From positions 28,582,001 through 28,646,000 of the forward strand of contig OZ004607.1 of the NCBI GenBank assembly GCA_963924565.1: 64,000 nt of DNA. Reading direction: 5' to 3'. The translations under genes and the position numbers were made by a program. Source of the stretch: Ascidiella aspersa (Eukaryota). Positions 17,858-47,865 of this stretch are shown in pieces (within the stretch, counting starts at the first letter, position 1; every line of letters starts with the position of its first letter). Under the pieces are notes generated by a model that was not told where the DNA came from, made no database searches, and was given only the letters and a program-made list of their open reading frames with translations.

Positions 17858-17966
17858 CGAAAAAACATGTTTCAAAGAATAGATAGTTTTAAAGCTTATG
17901 CAGATTGCTCAAGACGCGAAAAAAATATGTTTCAAAGAATAGATAGTTTTAAAGCTTATGTAGATT
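17858..17966. repeat. Tandem duplication, about 60-bp period, two copies
   Basis: ATGTTTCAAAGAATAGATAGTTTTAAAGCTTATG occurs twice, 60 bp apart. Confidence 0.85.
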
Positions 17967-39100: not shown

Positions 39101-41213
39101 TATTTCGCATTTAGGAGCTTGGTAGGAATACTCTATTGACCGTTAAGGCTGTACTGTAGTTTATTATATCACAGTTAACAATACTGCAAAATTTTGAATA
39201 AGCGCTTCGATTTTCGTTATACTACAAGTACAGCACGACAATGATTGTATTGTTTCACTTCTAACACAGCGTACTAAATAAGGCCACCTTGAAGACAGTG
39301 CAGTGCGCTGCAATGCCAATACGAGAACTAGGCACATTGGAATGCGTAAATTGCGCACTCACTCTCTTGCCACTGCAAACTGTCAAATAGGGTTATTAGG
39401 TCACCCTCCTATATACGCAGCAATTACTCATCGCGCTTTTCCGCGCGATTTTGCAAAGCGTAGTGGCGTACGTCCTGCGTGTATGGCCTCGGATTGACGC
39501 TCGTTGTCCATTTTTGCACCGTTGAATAAACAGCGGTGGTTGCACACTATAATGTTTTTCGCTTTTTTTACGGTTTGTGTGGAAAAGCAAGCTGGACATC
39601 GACCTATGCGCGCTTATTTCATTACACCTGCTCTCCACTTCTTTGGAGTTAGATGAATTGTCTAATAACAGTTAATTAATTAGGAAATCTCGCCGGCTGA
39701 TTTGTCTAAAAACCCTTAAAATCTCGCTCTCCTAAATTGTCCGAAACGCGAACATCAACAAAACAAACATATTCGTCCAACAAAAGTAAACTTGATATGT
39801 CTTTTCTATAGTACTTGGGCTCGATGCTGGTCCCGGAATTGAAGGGAGTCGAGTCGACGGTTGAGGCTTGCGCCAAAATGCGGAGGTCCACTGACTCAAT
39901 GAAGAAGATTCCCACAATCATGCTCTCCATCAACTACACGGGAGTCAAGTTCATCGACTCCAAGTCAAAGGTAGTTGGAAAATTTTCTAGTTGTCTAATA
40001 TCGCCAGACCAAAAGCGACTGGGTGGATGTCAAGGTCCTGATAACTCGTTGTGGCACCTTTTATTTGATTTTTACGAGCGAATAGGTGTTTTTTACGACT
40101 ATTTTATATTTCCATCTACATATAATCTTTTAAAGACCATTATTACGATAAGGTTAGCTGTTTAGTTTGGCGTTCGTCGTAGACAGGTTGATCATGTCCA
40201 GCACGGCGAACCTACCCATTTTTGTGTAAATTTTCAACCTAATTTCCAAGCAACAGCCGGTATTGTGCGGTAACATCATTGCATTTTAACGGTTCGGTCA
40301 AGTTTTGCCCATGCTTTTTTGTCATTAGCCGTATGTCTGTAACTGAACTACGACTACAATATTTTACTAGTAATATTGATAATGACATTAAAACACACTA
40401 CGATATTCACATACAACATTTCTTGGGTAGTTGTCTCACGATTTTGTAATCGTTTTTTTCACCAAAATGTTTCCAAACAATTTTCTTCCCGTTTACCTTA
40501 AAAAAATGCTTCCAATTTATATTAATCGATGTCTCCTGTTTGCAGCACGAAATCGCGGAGCACGAGATCTGCAACATCTCGTTCGCGTCGCAGGACTCGG
40601 AGGACCTCGCCACATTCGCCTACATCACCCACGATGTTCGCACCGGGCACCATTACTGCCACGTTTTCCGCGTCACCACCATGGTACGTTTCGAACTTAG
40701 TGATAATGCAGCCAATCGACCTTACTCGTTGTTTCATAGTATTTAGGGCGGTTATAATTCCTAAATTTTAGGCCCTTATAATTTCTAAAGTTTAGGGGGC
40801 TATCAAGTAGTTTTGGATAAGTTTTGGATAAGTTTTTGGCAATGCGCGGCGAAAGTATAGGCCTTCGCGAAATAAATAAAAAAAAATAAAAAAGCGTTAA
40901 AAATATCCACAATTATACAAGTTATTGTAAGTCAGGTTGCATTTAAAAAAATTAAAATGCTTTCGCACAACCATGTCTAAAATCTGGTAACTTCCCAAAT
41001 GCAATTCGTCTTTGCCGAGTGTTTGTAGTTTTGAGATCTAACAAATAATTGCTACCACCAGGTCGAAACCGATAAAAGCAGACGGTTAACAAGTGACTAT
41101 TCCCGCAGGACAAGGCCTACGAAATCATTCTTACCCTCGGCCAGGCCTTCGAGGTCGCCTACCAGCTCATCCTAAAGGACAAGGCGCTCAAGGAGAGCGA
41201 GTCCACCACGTGA
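30175..41213 (+). CDS. ANKS1: ANKS1A/ANKS1B (Odin/AIDA-1)-like adaptor with tandem SAM domains and C-terminal PTB domain; 5' end unresolved, no ankyrin exons seen in window
   Basis: 12 phase-compatible GT-AG exons: 30175-30675, 31114-31308, 31753-31895, 32306-32399, 34526-34629, 34858-35115, 35545-35658, 37874-38539, 38848-39054, 39812-39970, 40546-40683, 41109-41213 (TGA), about 894 codons. Motifs: [16 protein letters not shown]; SAM1 [28 protein letters not shown]; SAM2 [14 protein letters not shown]; [30 protein letters not shown]...[28 protein letters not shown]...HHYCHVF...[16 protein letters not shown], matching the ANKS1 family as I recall it. Confidence 0.93.
31394..31434 (+). ncRNA. 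Hammerhead-like motif (probable solo PLE pLTR remnant) in an ANKS1 intron
   Basis: CUUUGAC-CUGAUGA-A-GCAC-GGUU-GUGC-GAAA-GAUU-GUAGAG: both core boxes, perfect 4-bp stem II, bulged stem I, degenerate stem III. Confidence 0.5.
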
Positions 41214-42418
41214 CGTCATCGCATCGCCAAGTCATCAAAACGCGTTTGACAGTGCCGCGCGCGTAAAGGCAGAACACGAAATGGTAGAGCAGCGAGTAAA
41301 ATTTGCAGCACCGTTTGCCGATGGCTGCGATTTGCCGCTTGCCGTTTTCCCGGTGGTTCCCCGCAACACCAATCTTAGTAGACTCGCAATCATACTCAAG
41401 TTTGACTTTTCCGCGAAGCGACCGTCTGTACTTGCGTCGACAGAACTCTATTTGCAGCACGCCGATTGCGACTTTGTATAGTCGATGAAATCTTGACTGT
41501 GTTTTTTTTTTCAGATGCCTCGCATCCCTTTAACAAATCATGTCGAGATAGTACTTATTCGATCCAATTTTTTCGATATCAGTGATTGTGTCTTGGCGTT
41601 TTGTTTAGAAACACCGTAAAAATCGAGGCCGCACACCCAAACTCAAGTCGACCTGACATCAGCTTATTTTTGTAATATCGACTGATATCAGCTGTCCGCC
41701 GAACAATCATGTAGAATCAATGGCGCCGCGTTGCTTCCCGTTTGAAGTTGCAAAGCATAAAAAAAAACTTCTGTTCCTGTGAGGCCCGCTCTGCTGTGTG
41801 CTTCGTTTTTCTTGCGTCGTTTCTTCGTTGTTTTCCGTCGTCGTCGAATAACTCGCTGTTGTTTGGCTTTCTTCACACTCCCCCTATTTGTTGTTGATTT
41901 TTCGCGCGCAGTCCCCCGTGTTACTTTTTGTTCTTCTTTTTTCCTTTACGAGAGTTTTAACCTTATACCGACGAATACATTCGCTGTGGGCGAGAGTCAG
42001 CATGACGAGCGCGCGTGAAAAGTGAGTTGCTTTTTAAGGCAGTTTTCGTAAGTCTTTTCAATAATTCAGCGCAGGAAGTTTGGCCCATCGTCAATCATGT
42101 GCCGAAGTTTCGATGCAAGTAAATTGACAGAGATATTACACGGAAAGTTCGATACAGGCAATCTTGACACCGTCGTGGCATAGTTTCAGACTACAGTAAT
42201 AAGACCGAAATTAGATTAACATTTAGGATTAAAATAAGACCAAAATAGGTCTAATAATAAATCGTAGTATGGTCAAAATCAGGAATGGGCAAACTTTTCC
42301 ATGTCGCTGGCCAAAACTAACCTCAGAACGCCTCTGCGGGCCGAAATAACTTGCATAGTAAACTTATGAGGCATGAATTTATTTATATTTAAAATAGAAT
42401 CCTCTGGCATATATTTCT

Positions 42419-42467
42419 TTAACCAACGATTCGGCTTACTATCCGGCAAGCCTTCGTCAGGGACTAA
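42419..42467 (-). ncRNA. Minimal type I hammerhead ribozyme motif in the left pLTR (degenerate)
   Basis: Reverse strand reads UUAGUCC-CUGACGA-A-GGCUUGC-CGGAUA-GUAAGCC-GAAU-CGUU-GGUUAA; GAAA core mutated to GAAU. Confidence 0.65.
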
Positions 42468-43096
42468 CACACAAAGCCAACAGGGCGCAGAGTAAAATCA
42501 CACAAAGAAAAAAGGAGATAAAAATGTGCGAGACGCGTTCAAAATATACAGCGATGAAACAACGCACAATTCAGTGGTGATCTTTTAGCACCTGTCGGTA
42601 CGGCTCTGGAAACAAAACGTCCGTTTTGATGTTTATCGTACCCGGCCTTTGGGTTATATATCAGGATTCCCGAAATAGAAGTTTTTGGCATTAGCTCTCT
42701 CTTGCTCATTAAAGATGTTCTAAATACGTTAATCACGCCAGATGCGTTTTGACGATGGCGAAAGTGTCGTCCACATAGCGTTTCCAAAATCTGGGAGGGT
42801 CAAGAAAGGCTACGGGCTGTTCTTTCAGCAACGCCTGTAGAAACTCCGACGAATTACGTACTGTCCACCGTGTATTGCCCACTAAGGGTGATAATATTTG
42901 TGAAACAAGATTAACTAAGTTGTAGGTTTGTGTTCCAACAAAAAGAGAGCGACTACCGAAAACGTCTGTTTCGGGAATCCTGGCATATACACCAAAGGCC
43001 GGATACGATGAGCTGTATATTTTGAACGCGACTCGCACATTTTTATCTCCTTTTTTCTTTGTGTGATTTTACTCTGCGCCCTGTTGGCTTTGTGTG

Positions 43097-43145
43097 TTAG
43101 TCCCTGACGAAGGCTTGCCGGATAGTAAGCCGAAACATTGGTCAA
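43097..43145 (+). ncRNA. Minimal type I hammerhead ribozyme motif in the right pLTR (degenerate)
   Basis: CUGACGA 43104-43110, extra A, stem II GGCUUGC/GUAAGCC, GAAA 43132-43135, then CAUU instead of palindromic CGUU; short imperfect stem I. Confidence 0.7.
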
Positions 43146-45716
43146 AGAAATATATGCCAGAGGAACCTATTATAAATATACTATGCCTGGTAGCAACAGC
43201 ATATTTATTGAGGCATGTATTTAAAAGTACATTGTAAAGGACAGCAACGTTACACAAATGCATTATTATAGATACAATACTACGATCACTGGAGGCTGTA
43301 TAACTATCATATAAACCCGTTTGAATAGGACCTAAACGGCCCGTCCGAATAAGACCTAAATGTTTTACAGAACCTTTTATCAAATCCAAAACCCAACCCT
43401 TATTTGATCACTAACCCTCTTCAAAACTTAACCCCTAACCCGATTTTCTAACTCCACCCCTGGCCACAAAACAGGTACAATCAGCTAGGGTCCAAAGCGC
43501 CGTTCAAACTAGGGTGTCGATACAAAATATGGCCGATACCAGACCCATAACTTTCGATCGTTCCATACTTTCTCCTTAAAGTTTTAGTTAAGTTGCTATT
43601 TAGGCCTTTCAGGTATATTTCCGACGATTTTCGAACTTATTCCGACAGAGTAGTACACCGAAAAGCCATCGCAACTTCCGAGGGGCTAGATCACAGATGT
43701 TATTAAACACATATGTTTGTGTGTGTCTTTCATTTATTTCGACAGAATAAGATTTTGATTCAACCATTTTAGTTCGTATTTCGTCGTGTCTATTACTGCG
43801 CATTTGTCTTTATTGTGTTGGTCGTGATAGCCTACTATTCGCTTTAGTTATTGTTGATTAATAGGAAGAACATAGGTCCTTATTGTGTCTTATTACAGTA
43901 TGATCAATCAGATAGGCTTACAAAAATTATACCGCCATTGCATTCTTACTTTAACAACACATAACGTTTTTCCATCCACAACAGTGTTGATGTTACAAAT
44001 TAATTAGACTGGCGTAACCTAAATGTTCGCTTTTTAAGGTTTAAGTTTTCAAGCCTTTCAATGTCCTCTTAACTTTCGAAGCCAAGTTGGAATATCGATT
44101 GTTTTTTGTAAAAGTGAGACCTAGAGTTTTCGTCCACTACTGTTTTAATACGTTTAAAAATACCTAGAACTCATTTAAATCTGAAATAAAATGCCATATT
44201 CTATTTGCGACTATTATTATTTTACCATTAATTAAACTGGACGTGGTGTATAGCTTTTTAATACTAAGTGATCAATTAAAAACATTGTTGTAAAACATGC
44301 TTTCCATTTATTTACTTGTTTGTATGTGCAATTATCCAAGTAAAATGTATTTTTATCCATTAACCCTAAAAATATTTTTTTGTCACTCACTAGCACACCA
44401 AGAGGTTGTTACGATATCGTGTTGGCACGTCATGCTTGATTTAGCATGAAATGAAACCGTAAAAAGTTAAGTAGTTATGTCTGGTTGAACGGGTAGTAAT
44501 ATCTTAAGGTATTTTTTAATATTTCGTCAAAAAATCTAAAATACACAACAATAGGCGTATTAAATATATTTTATTCAACCATAAAACAATCAAATAGGTG
44601 CGTTAATTTTACAAGATACATAAAAATACATGCTACGCCTGAATAATTATTTTTACTAAACTACCCTAAGTTATTACGTTTTATACTATACCGGCTGATG
44701 TGGCACTGGCTTTGAATTTTAGTGAATATTTTTTATGACTTTAAAATATGTCCCTTTGCGATAATTTTAGTTATCTCAGTATAAAACTGGTCTTCAAGTT
44801 TTTCGAAATATGTAAATATTATATGCGGAAAATACATTCCACAGTGACGAAGTTAATGTACTGTTTTTGTCGAACAAAAAATATTGAAAATCAAACAGGA
44901 CAGTATATACGTTTTAGTTCACAGTTGACAGTATCATAAATAGGATACTTTTATATTCGAGAAAATTGTTTGTTATTTTAGCTCATGACAAAAGTAGGCA
45001 ATATCGAGAATATTGCATCTCAAATGCTACAGTAATGTTATTTATGTATACCTTTTGTGGGTAAGATTGTTTTTGAAGCCTAGATAATCATAATGAAAAT
45101 GATTAAAAAGTACTGTGGTATCACATTGTGGTGTGGTGTGTTACTGTTGAATGTAGCATTTCAGACCGTCTAACGCTGTTTTAGTGTTGCTTGTTCATAA
45201 TTAATAAGTAAAACAATAGTTTTAAAGCTATATCTAACACTTTACTTATCAATATATATGTCAGGTTGGAAAATTTGGCTGTGGCACACTCAGCCGCACA
45301 CTTTGTAGAAAATCACCAAGAATTTTAGATAGCATCGCAAACTTTAGTAGACAGCAAATACAAAAAAAGTATGAAAGATCTTGACGAGATTTCCCTTGTC
45401 CACCCACTAACAATTAGTGTGACTAAGTGCTTCAAAGTCAAAACTGCATCCGCTAGTTGGGTAAATAATTTGTCGTACAGGTTAGATCTGTTAAATAAAA
45501 CACTTGCATGTATACTTGGCCATAATTTTAACATTTTTTTATAGGATTTGTTTTGCAACACTAGGATATTTCTATGCTATTTAGTAAAGATTTTATATAT
45601 ATTTAATTACATTACAGTTTATATAAAAATGTCTTACTAAATCTATATATTTGTTCCATTTAGGAAGCACTATCCCTAATTGTTGTAGCATTTTGAATTG
45701 TTTTTTAATTAAAATT

Positions 45717-47004
45717 ATGAAGCACTGTTTTATTGCCCTTTTTGCTCTTTTATCATTTTGTGGATCAGTTTATTCTGAAGAAGGAGCAGCCAAAATTATT
45801 CTCATTAAAGATGTTCTAAATACGTTAATCACGGAAGGCAATGACTTGGTTGTTAAATACTCATTGTTCAACATTGGCGATGGGTAAGTTGTTCAAATTA
45901 CAGTAAAACTGTAAGCAAAAAAAGCCTATAGTTATTTTCAGTATAAAGTAATATCTTAAAATTTTCATGTTAGTAGGTAATAAATATTGAAACCAAAGCT
46001 TTACTTAAGCTTATGGTCAATTTCATGCGACATCAATTTGTAAACTTTTTTATCAACAGAACTGCTACTGATGTCCAGTTGGCAGACTCTTCTTTCCATG
46101 ACAGCGACTTTGAGCTGATCTCTGGTATGGTGAATGTAAAATGGGAGAGAATTCTTCCTGGTACTAATGTCTCGCATGTGGTGATTGTTCAGCCACTCAA
46201 ATCTGGGGCTTTCAACTTCACCTCGGCTGTGGTTCAATATGTTGCTGCTGAGGGTGATGAATCTACTGTAAGTGTGACTTAAGTGTTTTCTTCCTTAAAA
46301 TTGTTCTTGTGTTGTGAGCATTGCTATACACACTGTTTCATTGGTACTGTTATACTGTTTCATATATTAGTGTTTTTTGTAGTGTTTTGGCCTTAATTTG
46401 CATTACAGCTAAGTATAACATGTTGTTACTTGATTGCAGTTTGGCATGAGCAATGATCTTGGGGAGCTGGATATTTTATCTCAAAAAGAGTACAAGCGGC
46501 TTCATGCTTCACATATGGTAAATTGAAAAATGTCAATTGCTGTGTTAAAATCTTTGTTTAAAAATATGTTCTGTGCCATGATGATTTGAAATAACTGCGG
46601 TCTTGTGTTTTAAAAAGCAACCAATTTTCCACCTTTAGATACAAATATAGATTTTGTGAGAAACACATCTCCCCGCCTTTATCCCTTGTTTTTAAAGGAG
46701 TTTTGTTGGTTGACATGATTTAAAGGCTGTACATACATTCATCGAAAATCTAACCTCTTAACAAAGTTGCAAAAACTTCGGTCTATGTCAGAAATTTTGT
46801 TGCTGAAGCATGTTTGCTTTCCAACCGTTTAATTGCACCCACAATGCTACATCTTTATCGTAGCCCTATACGATTTTCCTCCTTTGTATTTTGCAGATTG
46901 AATGGGGCCTGTTTGCAGTCTGGTGCATTCCCTCTATAGCCCTGCCCTACCTGCTTTTCTACAAGAGCAAGAGCAAATATGGAACAAAAGCAAAGAAGAA
47001 CTAA
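45717..47004 (+). CDS. SSR2: Translocon-associated protein subunit beta (signal sequence receptor beta), 186 aa
   Basis: Exons 45717-45883, 46060-46267, 46440-46517, 46897-47004 (TAA). Signal peptide MKHCFIALFALLSFCGSVYS; motifs DLVVKYSLFNIG, WERILPGTNVSHVVIVQP, FNFTSAVVQY; C-terminal TM and basic tail KSKSKYGTKAKKN. AATAAA at 47322. Confidence 0.95.
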
Positions 47005-47865
47005 ACGCGTCGCCTATAAGTAATGAAAGCAGCAACAGCATCGTAACCGGCCGGTCTTCCATAGATCTGTTGGTCCTTTGTGCCGCTGCAACATTCCCTT
47101 TTCCTTGTTTTAGTGTTTTTCCAAATTTGGACGCGCGCGCACCCTTCTGCAACCAATCGCGATTGCCTTAAAATCACCTTAAATTGTGCAATGACGGCGT
47201 GAAGGTTCCGCCAGTGATTACTATTTGATACACTCGCGACTCGCTTTCTTTTTTCGGTTGTCGGTTGAATGAAGTTTCTCTCCTATTTTTAGGGCCAACG
47301 AAGCAGTTGTTGCATTGTTATAATAAAACGTGGTGATGGTTTGATCTATTTTGGAAATGTGTTATCATTTTTTTGTACGCACTTTAGTGTTGATAGTTCT
47401 GTTAAAAGGCCTGCAAAGAGTTTGATTATGGTTTCTTTAAACTATGTTTAAACAGTTCGTTCATGGTACTCTACCCAAAACCAATGTTTGTTACATTCGT
47501 AAAAGAACTTTAATATCTTCTGTAAGGTCACCTACCGAAGGCAAACTAGTTGTCGTCGTGAAGCTGTTACGACAATTATCTTGTGTGATTAAATATGTTA
47601 AGTCCGGTAAATTACCTAACTAAACACTGAACTGTTCGCACATCTACATGCCTTCAAATAATGAAATCCCCTTAAAACGTAAAAAAGTAACATATGGTTA
47701 TTTTTGGTGAGCAGCTATTTTGTTCTATTGTAAAGCGCTTACCAATGTAACAACACATAAGGCGACACACTGCGTTTATTTCTATACCTTTAAAAGCTAA
47801 AAAAAATTACGAACGCTACAACTTTCCATTAGTTTCTCAAAGGTCATGAACTTCTTGCTGTTAGG

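What the first reader, a model, noticed from the sequence alone, without database searches (positions are those of the whole stretch)
42705..42737. Exact 33-bp piece of the neighbouring SSR2 coding exon captured inside a retroelement junction
Seen: CTCATTAAAGATGTTCTAAATACGTTAATCACG at 42705-42737 is identical to 45801-45833 (SSR2 exon 1, codons LIKDVLNTLIT), 3.1 kb away in the same orientation. It sits where the Penelope-like RT fragment is joined to the endonuclease/pLTR part. The two pLTR arms differ at several positions but this piece has no mismatch, which suggests a recent event. Inference: a templated insertion, made either by repair synthesis copying nearby DNA or by RT template switching onto an abundant mRNA. 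In the element's sense (minus) strand it is antisense to SSR2 mRNA and sits at the base of a long hairpin loop, so small RNAs from this locus could target SSR2.
Basis: partly seen in the sequence, partly recalled or inferred. Interest (0 to 1): 0.75.

Follow-up and report, generated by a model that had tools for sequence, protein, structure and literature searches.

The report
Repair scar copying a neighbouring exon
A 33-base stretch of the SSR2 gene's first exon was copied into the junction of a large deletion inside a decayed retroelement 3 kb upstream, which looks like an ordinary DNA-repair scar and not a regulatory device.

Summary
Window 42705-42737 equals 45801-45833 at 33 of 33 bases, and identity stops sharply at both ends. 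These are the only two places in the 308.6-Mb genome, even allowing 3 mismatches. The donor is 11 in-frame codons of SSR2/TRAP-beta exon 1, which is expressed and spliced.

The recipient is a private, heavily deleted head-to-head copy of a Penelope-like element. Fuller copies elsewhere in the genome carry about 725 bp where this copy has the 33-mer. No other copy scored carries it. It is therefore filler DNA at a deletion junction.

- **Best reading (0.6):** templated insertion during DNA break repair or replication template switching, using DNA 3.1 kb away in cis.
- **Support:** donor proximity (chance 2e-5), one shared base at the left junction, a left breakpoint within 5 nt of the end of the inverted-repeat stem, and a private mutation cluster just left of the filler.
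- **Rival:** reverse-transcriptase switching onto SSR2 mRNA fits the orientation poorly.
- **"Recent event":** not supported (P of 0 mismatches is 0.25-0.50).
- **Small-RNA idea:** no support. RNA depth over the loop was 0.
- **Junction in reads:** only indirectly supported.

Unchecked scan notes report similar kb-range scars elsewhere in this genome. This is an ordinary kind of event, in a tidy example.

The parts
42705..42737 (+). 33-nt filler: an exact copy of part of SSR2 exon 1. It sits at the junction of a ~725-bp internal deletion of the retroelement copy. The first base (C) could equally belong to the element.
45801..45833 (+). Donor: 11 in-frame codons of SSR2/TRAP-beta exon 1.
45717..45883 (+). 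SSR2 first coding exon, from the ATG to the splice donor. It is expressed.
46060..46279 (+). SSR2 second coding exon. The 3' limit was not mapped precisely; RNA reads leave the stretch near 46267.
42384..42704 (-). Left arm: the 3' end of the sense copy of the Penelope-like element (last ~44 codons of the nuclease region plus 3' UTR). It is collinear with the RT fragments.
42635..42704 (.). Cluster of private substitutions just left of the filler. 7 of 70 positions are private, against 6 of 435 in the rest of the arms. Between the two arms, 12 of 69 mismatch here against 7 of 169 in the outer part.
42738..42808 (-). RT fragment a (YVDD region), 96-97% identical to fuller copies.
42809..42943 (-). 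RT fragment b (upstream RT region), 94% identical to fuller copies. It is joined to fragment a across a private 282-bp deletion with a 2-nt overlap.
42944..43209 (+). Right arm: an inverted, 5'-truncated copy of the element's 3' end. It has a private 107-bp deletion at 43011|43012 and a 29-nt outer tail (43181-43209) that the left arm lacks.

Best explanation
The 33-mer is filler DNA, a templated insertion, at the junction of a ~725-bp deletion inside an old, non-functional head-to-head copy of a Penelope-like retroelement.

A break or a stalled fork arose in the element at the inner end of its left arm. One 3' end was extended for 32-33 nt on the chromosome's own DNA 3.1 kb away, in SSR2 exon 1, primed by as little as one base. 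It was then released and joined without homology to the other end in the RT region. The event removed the segment that encodes the thumb/HTH region and the GIY-YIG core.

- **Shown:** the deletion, the filler, its donor, and its uniqueness.
- **Inferred:** the enzymology (polymerase-theta-type end joining, or replicative template switching of the FoSTeS/MMBIR type); that the hairpin-forming inverted repeat provoked the break; and that the event came after the element inserted.
- **Function:** none is proposed. It is a neutral scar.
For: 1. **Deletion with filler.** Against fuller copies (L033, L034) the window copy is collinear. It lacks 725 bp exactly where the 33-mer sits: window 42705 corresponds to L033 2492 and window 42738 to L033 1766.
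2. **Private to this copy.** None of the 150 matches (40 of 746 candidates scored) covers the 33-mer. The same holds for the 41 matches (40 of 70 scored). The genome holds the string only at the two window places.
3. **Donor in cis.** The donor is 3.1 kb away in the same orientation. A random genomic donor would lie that close with probability 2e-5.
4. **Junction anatomy.** One base (C at 42705) is shared by element and donor at the left junction. This matches the single-nucleotide priming reported for polymerase theta (PMC5068794, passages read).
5. **Breakpoint at the stem end.** The left breakpoint (L033 coordinate 2492) lies within 5 nt of where the inverted right arm ends (L033 2494-2497). 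The deletion and filler therefore begin at the stem-loop boundary of the fold-back. This coordinate is not a family-wide boundary: 0 of 43 matches end there.
6. **Mutation cluster.** Private substitutions cluster in the 70 nt left of the filler (Fisher p 6e-4; p 0.0013). The matching part of the right arm is 100% identical to another copy. This fits local error-prone processing.
7. **Other private deletions.** The same copy carries two more private internal deletions, of 282 bp and 107 bp. An 80-nt contig of run X2 at single-copy depth spans 43011|43012.
8. **Leads only.** Unchecked scan notes report similar short copies made 3.6 kb and 11 kb from their sources in unique DNA of this genome.
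Against: - The right junction shares no base with the donor.
- The donor distance is far beyond the usual polymerase-theta pattern. About 85% of inserts arise within 10 bp of the break and only ~3% from distant sites, and the average insert is ~10 bp (PMC5068794).
- If an error-prone polymerase made the adjacent mutation cluster, a perfect 33-nt copy is unexpected. P(0 mismatches) at that rate is 0.0018. The cluster and the filler may therefore be separate events.
- Before the deletion the loop would have been ~1.2 kb. Work cited in PMC3300023 found no replication stalling at 320-bp inverted repeats once the spacer reached 52 bp, so hairpin-provoked breakage is uncertain.
- Whether the genome has a polymerase-theta gene was not settled. 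An A-family polymerase gene exists, but none of the 10 open stretches tested upstream hit any Pfam family.
- Nothing here dates the filler relative to the insertion.
Confidence: 0.6

Rival explanations
1. Reverse-transcriptase template switching at the time of retrotransposition. While copying the element's RNA, the Penelope RT left its template at the end of the arm, copied 33 nt of an SSR2-derived template, and rejoined the element RNA 725 nt further on. The 282-bp and 107-bp gaps arose in the same round.
For: - The pieces are collinear and in the right order and orientation (arm, RT fragment a, RT fragment b), as forward jumps along one template would give.
- One 830-bp copy holds three private internal gaps.
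- Internal microhomology-mediated deletions and inverted pLTR structures are described for Penelope copies, and an antisense-template model was discussed (PMC3846280, passages read). With an antisense template the observed orientation would fit SSR2 mRNA.
- A nascent SSR2 transcript would be physically close.
Against: - Under canonical target-primed reverse transcription, the first-strand cDNA of this copy is the + strand. It carries SSR2 sense sequence, so SSR2 mRNA cannot have been its template.
- No antisense SSR2 RNA was seen: depth 0 against 55 (one run).
- An abundant-mRNA donor gives no reason for the donor to be the adjacent gene.
- The break coordinate is not a family hot spot: 0 of 43 matches end there.
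- No comparable unique-gene filler was seen in the roughly 30 other places examined. Internal non-family gaps there were 1-14 nt, 137 nt (the 137-nt one, L035, is another repeat) and 953 nt (L018, not examined).
- The donor lies within one exon, so no splice junction can prove an RNA origin.
Confidence: 0.2
2. Capture of a free 33-bp patch by classical end joining. The patch would be a small cDNA or DNA fragment of SSR2, ligated into a double-strand break, as in class 2 templated sequence insertions.
For: - The right junction is blunt and the left shares at most one base.
- Class 2 templated sequence insertions show end-joining features and are enriched for transcribed sequence (PMC5110952, passages read).
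- SSR2 is expressed.
Against: - Such patches come from anywhere in the genome. A donor 3.1 kb away would be a coincidence of about 2e-5 for DNA, or about one in the number of expressed genes for RNA.
- The same orientation as the donor is not required by this model, so it explains less.
Confidence: 0.1
3. Assembly artefact: the 33-mer was placed at the junction by a mis-join in a hard-to-assemble fold-back repeat.
For: - No read or contig that crosses the junction was individually displayed.
- The exact look-up and the homology search of the junction-spanning ORF found nothing in public assemblies.
- The metagenome scan found 0 matches.
Against: - The independent Illumina run X6 gives normal single-copy depth (8.9) in bin 42588-42734. 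The nearest other copies are at most 87% identical there, and reads had to be at least 95% alike.
- No joint or loose end at the junction appears among the rows shown.
- An assembler has no reason to insert an exact 33-bp exon piece between two retroelement segments.
Confidence: 0.05

Closest known systems
Polymerase-theta-mediated end joining with templated inserts ("delins"), as in C. elegans (PMC5068794)
   Same: A deletion comes with a short insert copied exactly from existing DNA. One shared base at the priming junction is enough. The scar is neutral.
   Different: The donor here is 3.1 kb away rather than within ~10 bp. The insert is 33 nt rather than ~10. The second junction shares no base. 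The enzyme was not identified in this genome.
Replicative template switching (FoSTeS/MMBIR) - name and properties recalled, no paper read here
   Same: Short stretches are copied from templates a few kb away in cis and joined with little or no homology, often with several switches in one event. This would also account for the 282-bp gap.
   Different: Those events are usually described for larger copy-number changes. Nothing here shows that a replication fork was involved.
Class 2 templated sequence insertions (PMC5110952)
   Same: A patch of transcribed sequence sits at a break, with end-joining-type junctions and an intact donor.
   Different: Those patches come from distant loci and are thought to be RNA-derived. 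This donor is the neighbouring gene, in cis.
Host-gene capture by Penelope-like elements in Adineta vaga (PMC3846280)
   Same: Host gene sequence lies inside Penelope terminal-repeat structures. Inverted pLTRs, a one-sided ~31-bp tail and internal deletions are described there.
   Different: There, whole intron-containing genes lie between pLTRs and were mobilised. Here, 33 nt sit at a deletion junction of a dead copy and were not mobilised.

Membership tests
Penelope-like element (the recipient) | Reverse transcriptase with a YVDD-type core | tested here: inconclusive
   The YVDD box is visible in the window ORF and in the L033 ORF. Pfam RVT_1 scored only E 0.05, 13.7 bits against a cut-off of 29.6. 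The nearest Atlas clusters carry HTH_animal, GIY-YIG and RVT_1 and are animal (scores 0.94-0.97, leads only).
Penelope-like element (the recipient) | C-terminal GIY-YIG endonuclease in the same ORF | tested here: inconclusive
   A GIY-YIG-like motif lies downstream of the RT in L033 ORF 1592-2626. Pfam GIY-YIG scored E 0.029, 15.1 bits against a cut-off of 22.6. The motif-bearing segment is deleted in the window copy.
Penelope-like element (the recipient) | Terminal repeats in direct or inverted arrangement, with an optional short tail on one inverted repeat | tested here: met
   Inverted arms are present in the window and in L033, L034, L036 and L037. A 29-nt tail occurs on the right arm only. 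The feature is described in PMC3846280.
Penelope-like element (the recipient) | Hammerhead ribozyme motif in the terminal repeat | tested here: not met
   Rfam found no hammerhead at E<=1 in window 41000-47500, L033 or L036, nor at E<=10 in 42340-43230. Decayed or minimal motifs could be missed.
Templated insertion of the polymerase-theta end-joining type | The insert is identical to existing DNA and accompanies a deletion | tested here: met
   33 of 33 bases are identical, and 725 bp are missing relative to fuller copies.
Templated insertion of the polymerase-theta end-joining type | At least one base of identity between the primer end and the donor at the start, and between the insert end and the acceptor | tested here: inconclusive
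   The left junction shares 1 base (C). The right junction shares 0.
Templated insertion of the polymerase-theta end-joining type | The template lies in the immediate flank of the break | tested here: not met
   The donor is 3,096 bp away. About 85% of known inserts arise within 10 bp and ~3% from distant sites (PMC5068794).
Templated insertion of the polymerase-theta end-joining type | Dependence on polymerase theta | not testable with these tools
   An A-family polymerase gene is present at C3:8475229-8480893. A helicase part was not found in 10 open stretches upstream.
RT-mediated capture of host mRNA | Orientation is the complement of the mRNA on the first-strand cDNA | tested here: not met
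   The element's sense strand is minus, so the first-strand cDNA is the + strand. That strand carries SSR2 sense sequence.
RT-mediated capture of host mRNA | Evidence of an RNA origin (a spliced junction or poly-A) | not testable with these tools
   The 33 nt lie within one exon, so there is no splice junction and no poly-A.
Hairpin small-RNA locus targeting a host gene | The locus is transcribed and the targeting segment lies in a processed duplex | tested here: not met
   RNA depth was 0 on both strands in 42588-42881, in one RNA run of which about 6% was read. The filler has no complement in the opposite arm. Small-RNA libraries were not available.

The most novel reading that the evidence does not exclude
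The filler records the Penelope reverse transcriptase jumping from an antisense element template onto the nascent SSR2 transcript next door. This would be sequence-level support for the antisense-template model of Penelope retrotransposition discussed in PMC3846280. A still bolder variant is that minus-strand transcripts of this fold-back yield piRNA-type small RNAs against SSR2.
Probability: 0.1. Interest if true: 0.55.

Novelty: new member of a known kind. Interest (0 to 1): 0.22.

Why it matters
In itself it matters little. It is one neutral scar in a dead retroelement copy, with no sign of expression or regulation.

It is a clean natural example of a templated insertion whose donor lies kilobases away in cis, in a sea-squirt genome. 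Unchecked scan notes report similar kb-range copies elsewhere in that genome. If a census confirmed that such long-range fillers are common there, it would say something about how tunicates repair breaks.

The breakpoint at the stem-loop boundary and the one-sided mutation cluster also make this a possible case study of how fold-back retroelement copies decay.

Tried and rejected
- **Family consensus.** The idea that the 33-mer belongs to the family consensus is rejected.
- **Chance.** Rejected.
- **Natural boundary or ribozyme cleavage point at the break coordinate.** 0 of 43 family matches end there and truncation points are scattered. Rfam found no hammerhead.
- **A deleted master copy.** No other copy is contiguous across the 282-bp gap: 0 of 12 candidates, all scored.
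- **A closer source for the mutated left inner arm.** The best match was 87% (40 of 70 candidates scored).
- **A second templated patch inside the mutated tract.** Only two 12-mer matches turned up elsewhere in the window, about what chance gives by my estimate.
- **Fillers in other copies.** Internal non-family gaps were 1-14 nt, plus a 137-nt piece that is another repeat and a 953-nt piece in L018 that I did not examine. I read the 14-nt piece in L029 by eye only.
- **Flanks as part of the palindrome.** Only 10-mers matched.
- **Independent support for the junction.** The exact look-up failed for 2 of 2 ORFs. The homology search found no candidate.
- **Polymerase-theta gene.** Not settled.
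- **Window-wide scan for short exact repeats.** It found 2 direct repeats of 22 nt or more. My low-complexity filter was length-biased and dropped long repeats, so the inverted-repeat list (0) is invalid and I do not use it.
- **MIR1023 match in L036.** I take it as a generic long-hairpin score. This is inference and was not tested.
- **Papers.** PMC5068794, PMC3846280, PMC11167929, PMC5110952 and PMC3300023 were read as passages only. Other papers appear only as search listings. Supplements were not opened. S5 Fig of PMC5068794, on the distances of distant donors, may bear on how unusual 3.1 kb is.
- **Recalled, not from any call.** FoSTeS/MMBIR and flap trimming by XPF-type nucleases.

Full report
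**Observation**

The string at window 42705-42737 is identical at 33 of 33 bases to 45801-45833, on the same strand and 3,096 bp downstream. Identity stops at once on both sides: 42704 G against 45800 T, and 42738 C against 45834 G. None of 100 dinucleotide-preserving shuffles gave two matches. A scan of the whole 308.6-Mb assembly with up to 3 mismatches found these two places only.

The downstream copy is 11 in-frame codons of the first coding exon of a TRAP-beta/SSR2 gene. I searched the two exons apart and made no joined model. Exon 1 (45717-45881) matched Pfam TRAP_beta at E 2.8e-6 and exon 2 (46061-46279) at E 8.9e-24, both above the curated cut-off. In RNA run X7 both exons are covered at depth 26-55 on one strand only, and 46 reads splice out the intron at about 45884-46059. 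Because the Pfam match to exon 1 covers these codons, SSR2 is the donor and 42705-42737 is the copy.

**What the recipient is**

Window 42384-43209 is a fold-back. Arms 42384-42552 and 43012-43180 are 96% complementary (7 mismatches in 169). Arms 42635-42703 and 42941-43009 are 83% complementary. The loop is 237 nt. As RNA, the minus strand folds at -467 kcal/mol, z = -25.

The genome holds many relatives of the arms and about ten places with the RT region. Two fuller copies (L033, L034; ~2.6 kb) have inverted arms around a frameshifted ORF. That ORF carries a YVDD box and, downstream, a GIY-YIG-like motif. Pfam sees both domains only weakly: RVT_1 at E 0.05 and GIY-YIG at E 0.029, both under the cut-offs. 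The nearest ESM-Atlas clusters are animal proteins with HTH_animal, GIY-YIG and RVT_1. The head-to-head arrangement and a ~29-nt tail on one arm only (43181-43209) match what is described for Penelope-like elements (PMC3846280, passages). Rfam found no hammerhead in the element. I therefore call it a Penelope-like element, with the ribozyme feature not met.

**The filler sits at a deletion junction**

Laid on L033, the window copy is collinear but has gaps:

| Window | L033 | Note |
|---|---|---|
| 42384-42705 | 2844->2492 | left arm |
| 42738-42809 | 1766->1695 | RT fragment a |
| 42808-42943 | 1412->1277 | RT fragment b |
| 42944-43011 | 579->512 | right arm, inner part |
| 43012-43209 | 404->~230 | right arm, outer part |

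About 725 bp are missing exactly where the 33-mer sits. That segment encodes the region from just after the YVDD box to the GIY-YIG core.

A further 282 bp are missing at 42808/42809, with a 2-nt overlap. A further 107 bp are missing at 43011|43012. The place 42943|42944 is the head-to-head join.

No other copy carries the filler. None of the 150 matches covers it (40 of 746 candidates scored). None of the 41 matches reaches past 42705 (40 of 70 scored). The 282-bp gap is also private: 0 of 12 candidates, all scored. An 80-nt contig of run X2 at single-copy depth spans 43011|43012.

**Junction detail**

Element homology runs through the C at 42705, which the donor shares at 45801. That gives one base of overlap on the left. 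On the right there is none.

The left breakpoint (L033 coordinate 2492) lies within 5 nt of the coordinate where the inverted right arm ends (2494-2497, depending on a 3-4-nt ambiguous run at the join). The filler therefore begins at the stem-loop boundary of the fold-back. My rough post-hoc estimate for such a coincidence is about 1% (11 of ~1,050 possible positions). The coordinate is not a family boundary: of 43 matches to a 301-nt probe centred on it, 0 end there, and truncation points are scattered.

**A mutation cluster beside the filler**

The 70 nt left of the filler (42635-42704) carry 7 positions whose base is shared by no other aligned copy. The rest of the arms carry 6 such positions in 435 (Fisher p 6e-4).

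Arm against arm, the inner part has 12 mismatches in 69 and the outer part 7 in 169 (p 0.0013). The matching inner part of the right arm is 100% identical to another copy, L003. No closer source for the left inner arm was found; the best was 87%.

At that local rate a perfect 33-mer would be unlikely (P 0.0018). The cluster either predates the filler or was made by a process that spared it. I cannot explain it further.

**Mechanism**

The best-supported reading is DNA-templated synthesis during break repair or replication template switching. A 3' end at the inner end of the left arm was extended on DNA 3.1 kb away and then joined to the RT region.

In favour:
- The donor lies in cis and in the same orientation (random expectation 2e-5).
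- The left junction shares a single base, which is sufficient for polymerase theta in C. elegans (PMC5068794).
- The breakpoint lies at the stem end.
- The flank is mutated.
- As unchecked leads only, scan notes describe similar short copies made 3.6 kb and 11 kb from their sources in unique DNA of this sea-squirt genome.

Against:
- The right junction is blunt.
- Polymerase-theta inserts mostly come from within 10 bp, with ~3% from distant sites.
- The ancestral spacer of ~1.2 kb is long for hairpin-provoked stalling (PMC3300023).
- I could not show that the A-family polymerase gene at C3:8475229-8480893 is a helicase-polymerase fusion.

**Rivals**

*RT template switching at insertion.* This would explain the collinear, multiply gapped structure. 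However, under canonical target-primed reverse transcription the first-strand cDNA of this copy is the + strand, which carries SSR2 sense sequence. SSR2 mRNA cannot have been its template, and no antisense SSR2 RNA was seen (depth 0 against 55). The model survives only with second-strand switching, a DNA template, or the antisense-template idea discussed in PMC3846280.

*Capture of a free cDNA or DNA patch.* This fits the blunt junction (class 2 insertions, PMC5110952) but not the donor's proximity.

*Assembly artefact.* This is unlikely but not excluded. DNA run X6 differs from the assembly at many sites, for example 42556 G>A in 10 of 10 reads. It gives depth 8.9 in bin 42588-42734, where other copies are at most 87% alike and reads had to be at least 95% alike. 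No joint or loose end at the junction is among the rows shown. Many rows were not shown, and no junction-spanning record was displayed.

*"Recent because it has no mismatch" does not follow.* At the outer-arm divergence, the probability of 0 mismatches in 33 nt is 0.25 if both copies drift, and 0.50 if only the filler drifts.

But it has no partner in the opposite arm, so a stem-derived duplex would not contain it. RNA depth over 42588-42881 was 0 on both strands in the one RNA run laid (about 6% of that run was read). Small-RNA libraries were not available.

**Verdict**

This is a real, unique, well-defined templated insertion at a deletion junction of a decayed Penelope-like fold-back, copied from the neighbouring SSR2 exon. 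The kind is known and the example is tidy. No function is indicated.

Noticed in passing
window 42635-42704: One-sided cluster of private substitutions next to the filler. 7 of 70 positions are private, against 6 of 435 in the rest of the arms. The matching part of the other arm is 100% identical to another copy. The cause is unknown.
   Followed up: yes
window 43617-43763: Very high-copy short repeat. DNA depth is about 2,100 against about 6 in unique bins. More than 1,600 reads join opposite strands at 43651/43671, which suggests a small palindromic dispersed element.
   Followed up: no
window 42253-42256 and 43340-43342: Reads and contigs join these two places with 13-38 varying letters between them and only 21-23 matching letters on the shorter side. 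They look like other copies of a short dispersed repeat whose two boxes flank the retroelement here, not an empty-site allele.
   Followed up: partly
L036 680-858 (G000:C9, centre of another fold-back copy): Rfam MIR1023 (a plant microRNA precursor family) matches on both strands at 59-60 bits, below the gathering score of 90. This is probably a generic score for a long perfect hairpin.
   Followed up: partly
window 43181-43209: A 29-nt tail is present on the right arm only. It is shared with other copies and followed by diverse flanks in the reads. It resembles the one-sided ~31-bp tail described for Penelope inverted pLTRs (PMC3846280).
   Followed up: partly
L029 1698-1711 (G000:C2): A 14-nt non-family piece at an inverted junction of another copy. 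By eye it looks like the reverse complement of nearby family sequence, a snap-back-type filler.
   Followed up: partly
window 17867-17900 and 17927-17960: The only other short exact direct repeat found in the window: 34 nt, with copies 60 nt apart.
   Followed up: no
window 42000-46400: Runs X6, X1 and X2 differ from the assembly at many sites in all their reads, for example 42091, 42556, 44227 and 44232, plus indels at 43908 and 44316. They represent other haplotypes or individuals.
   Followed up: no
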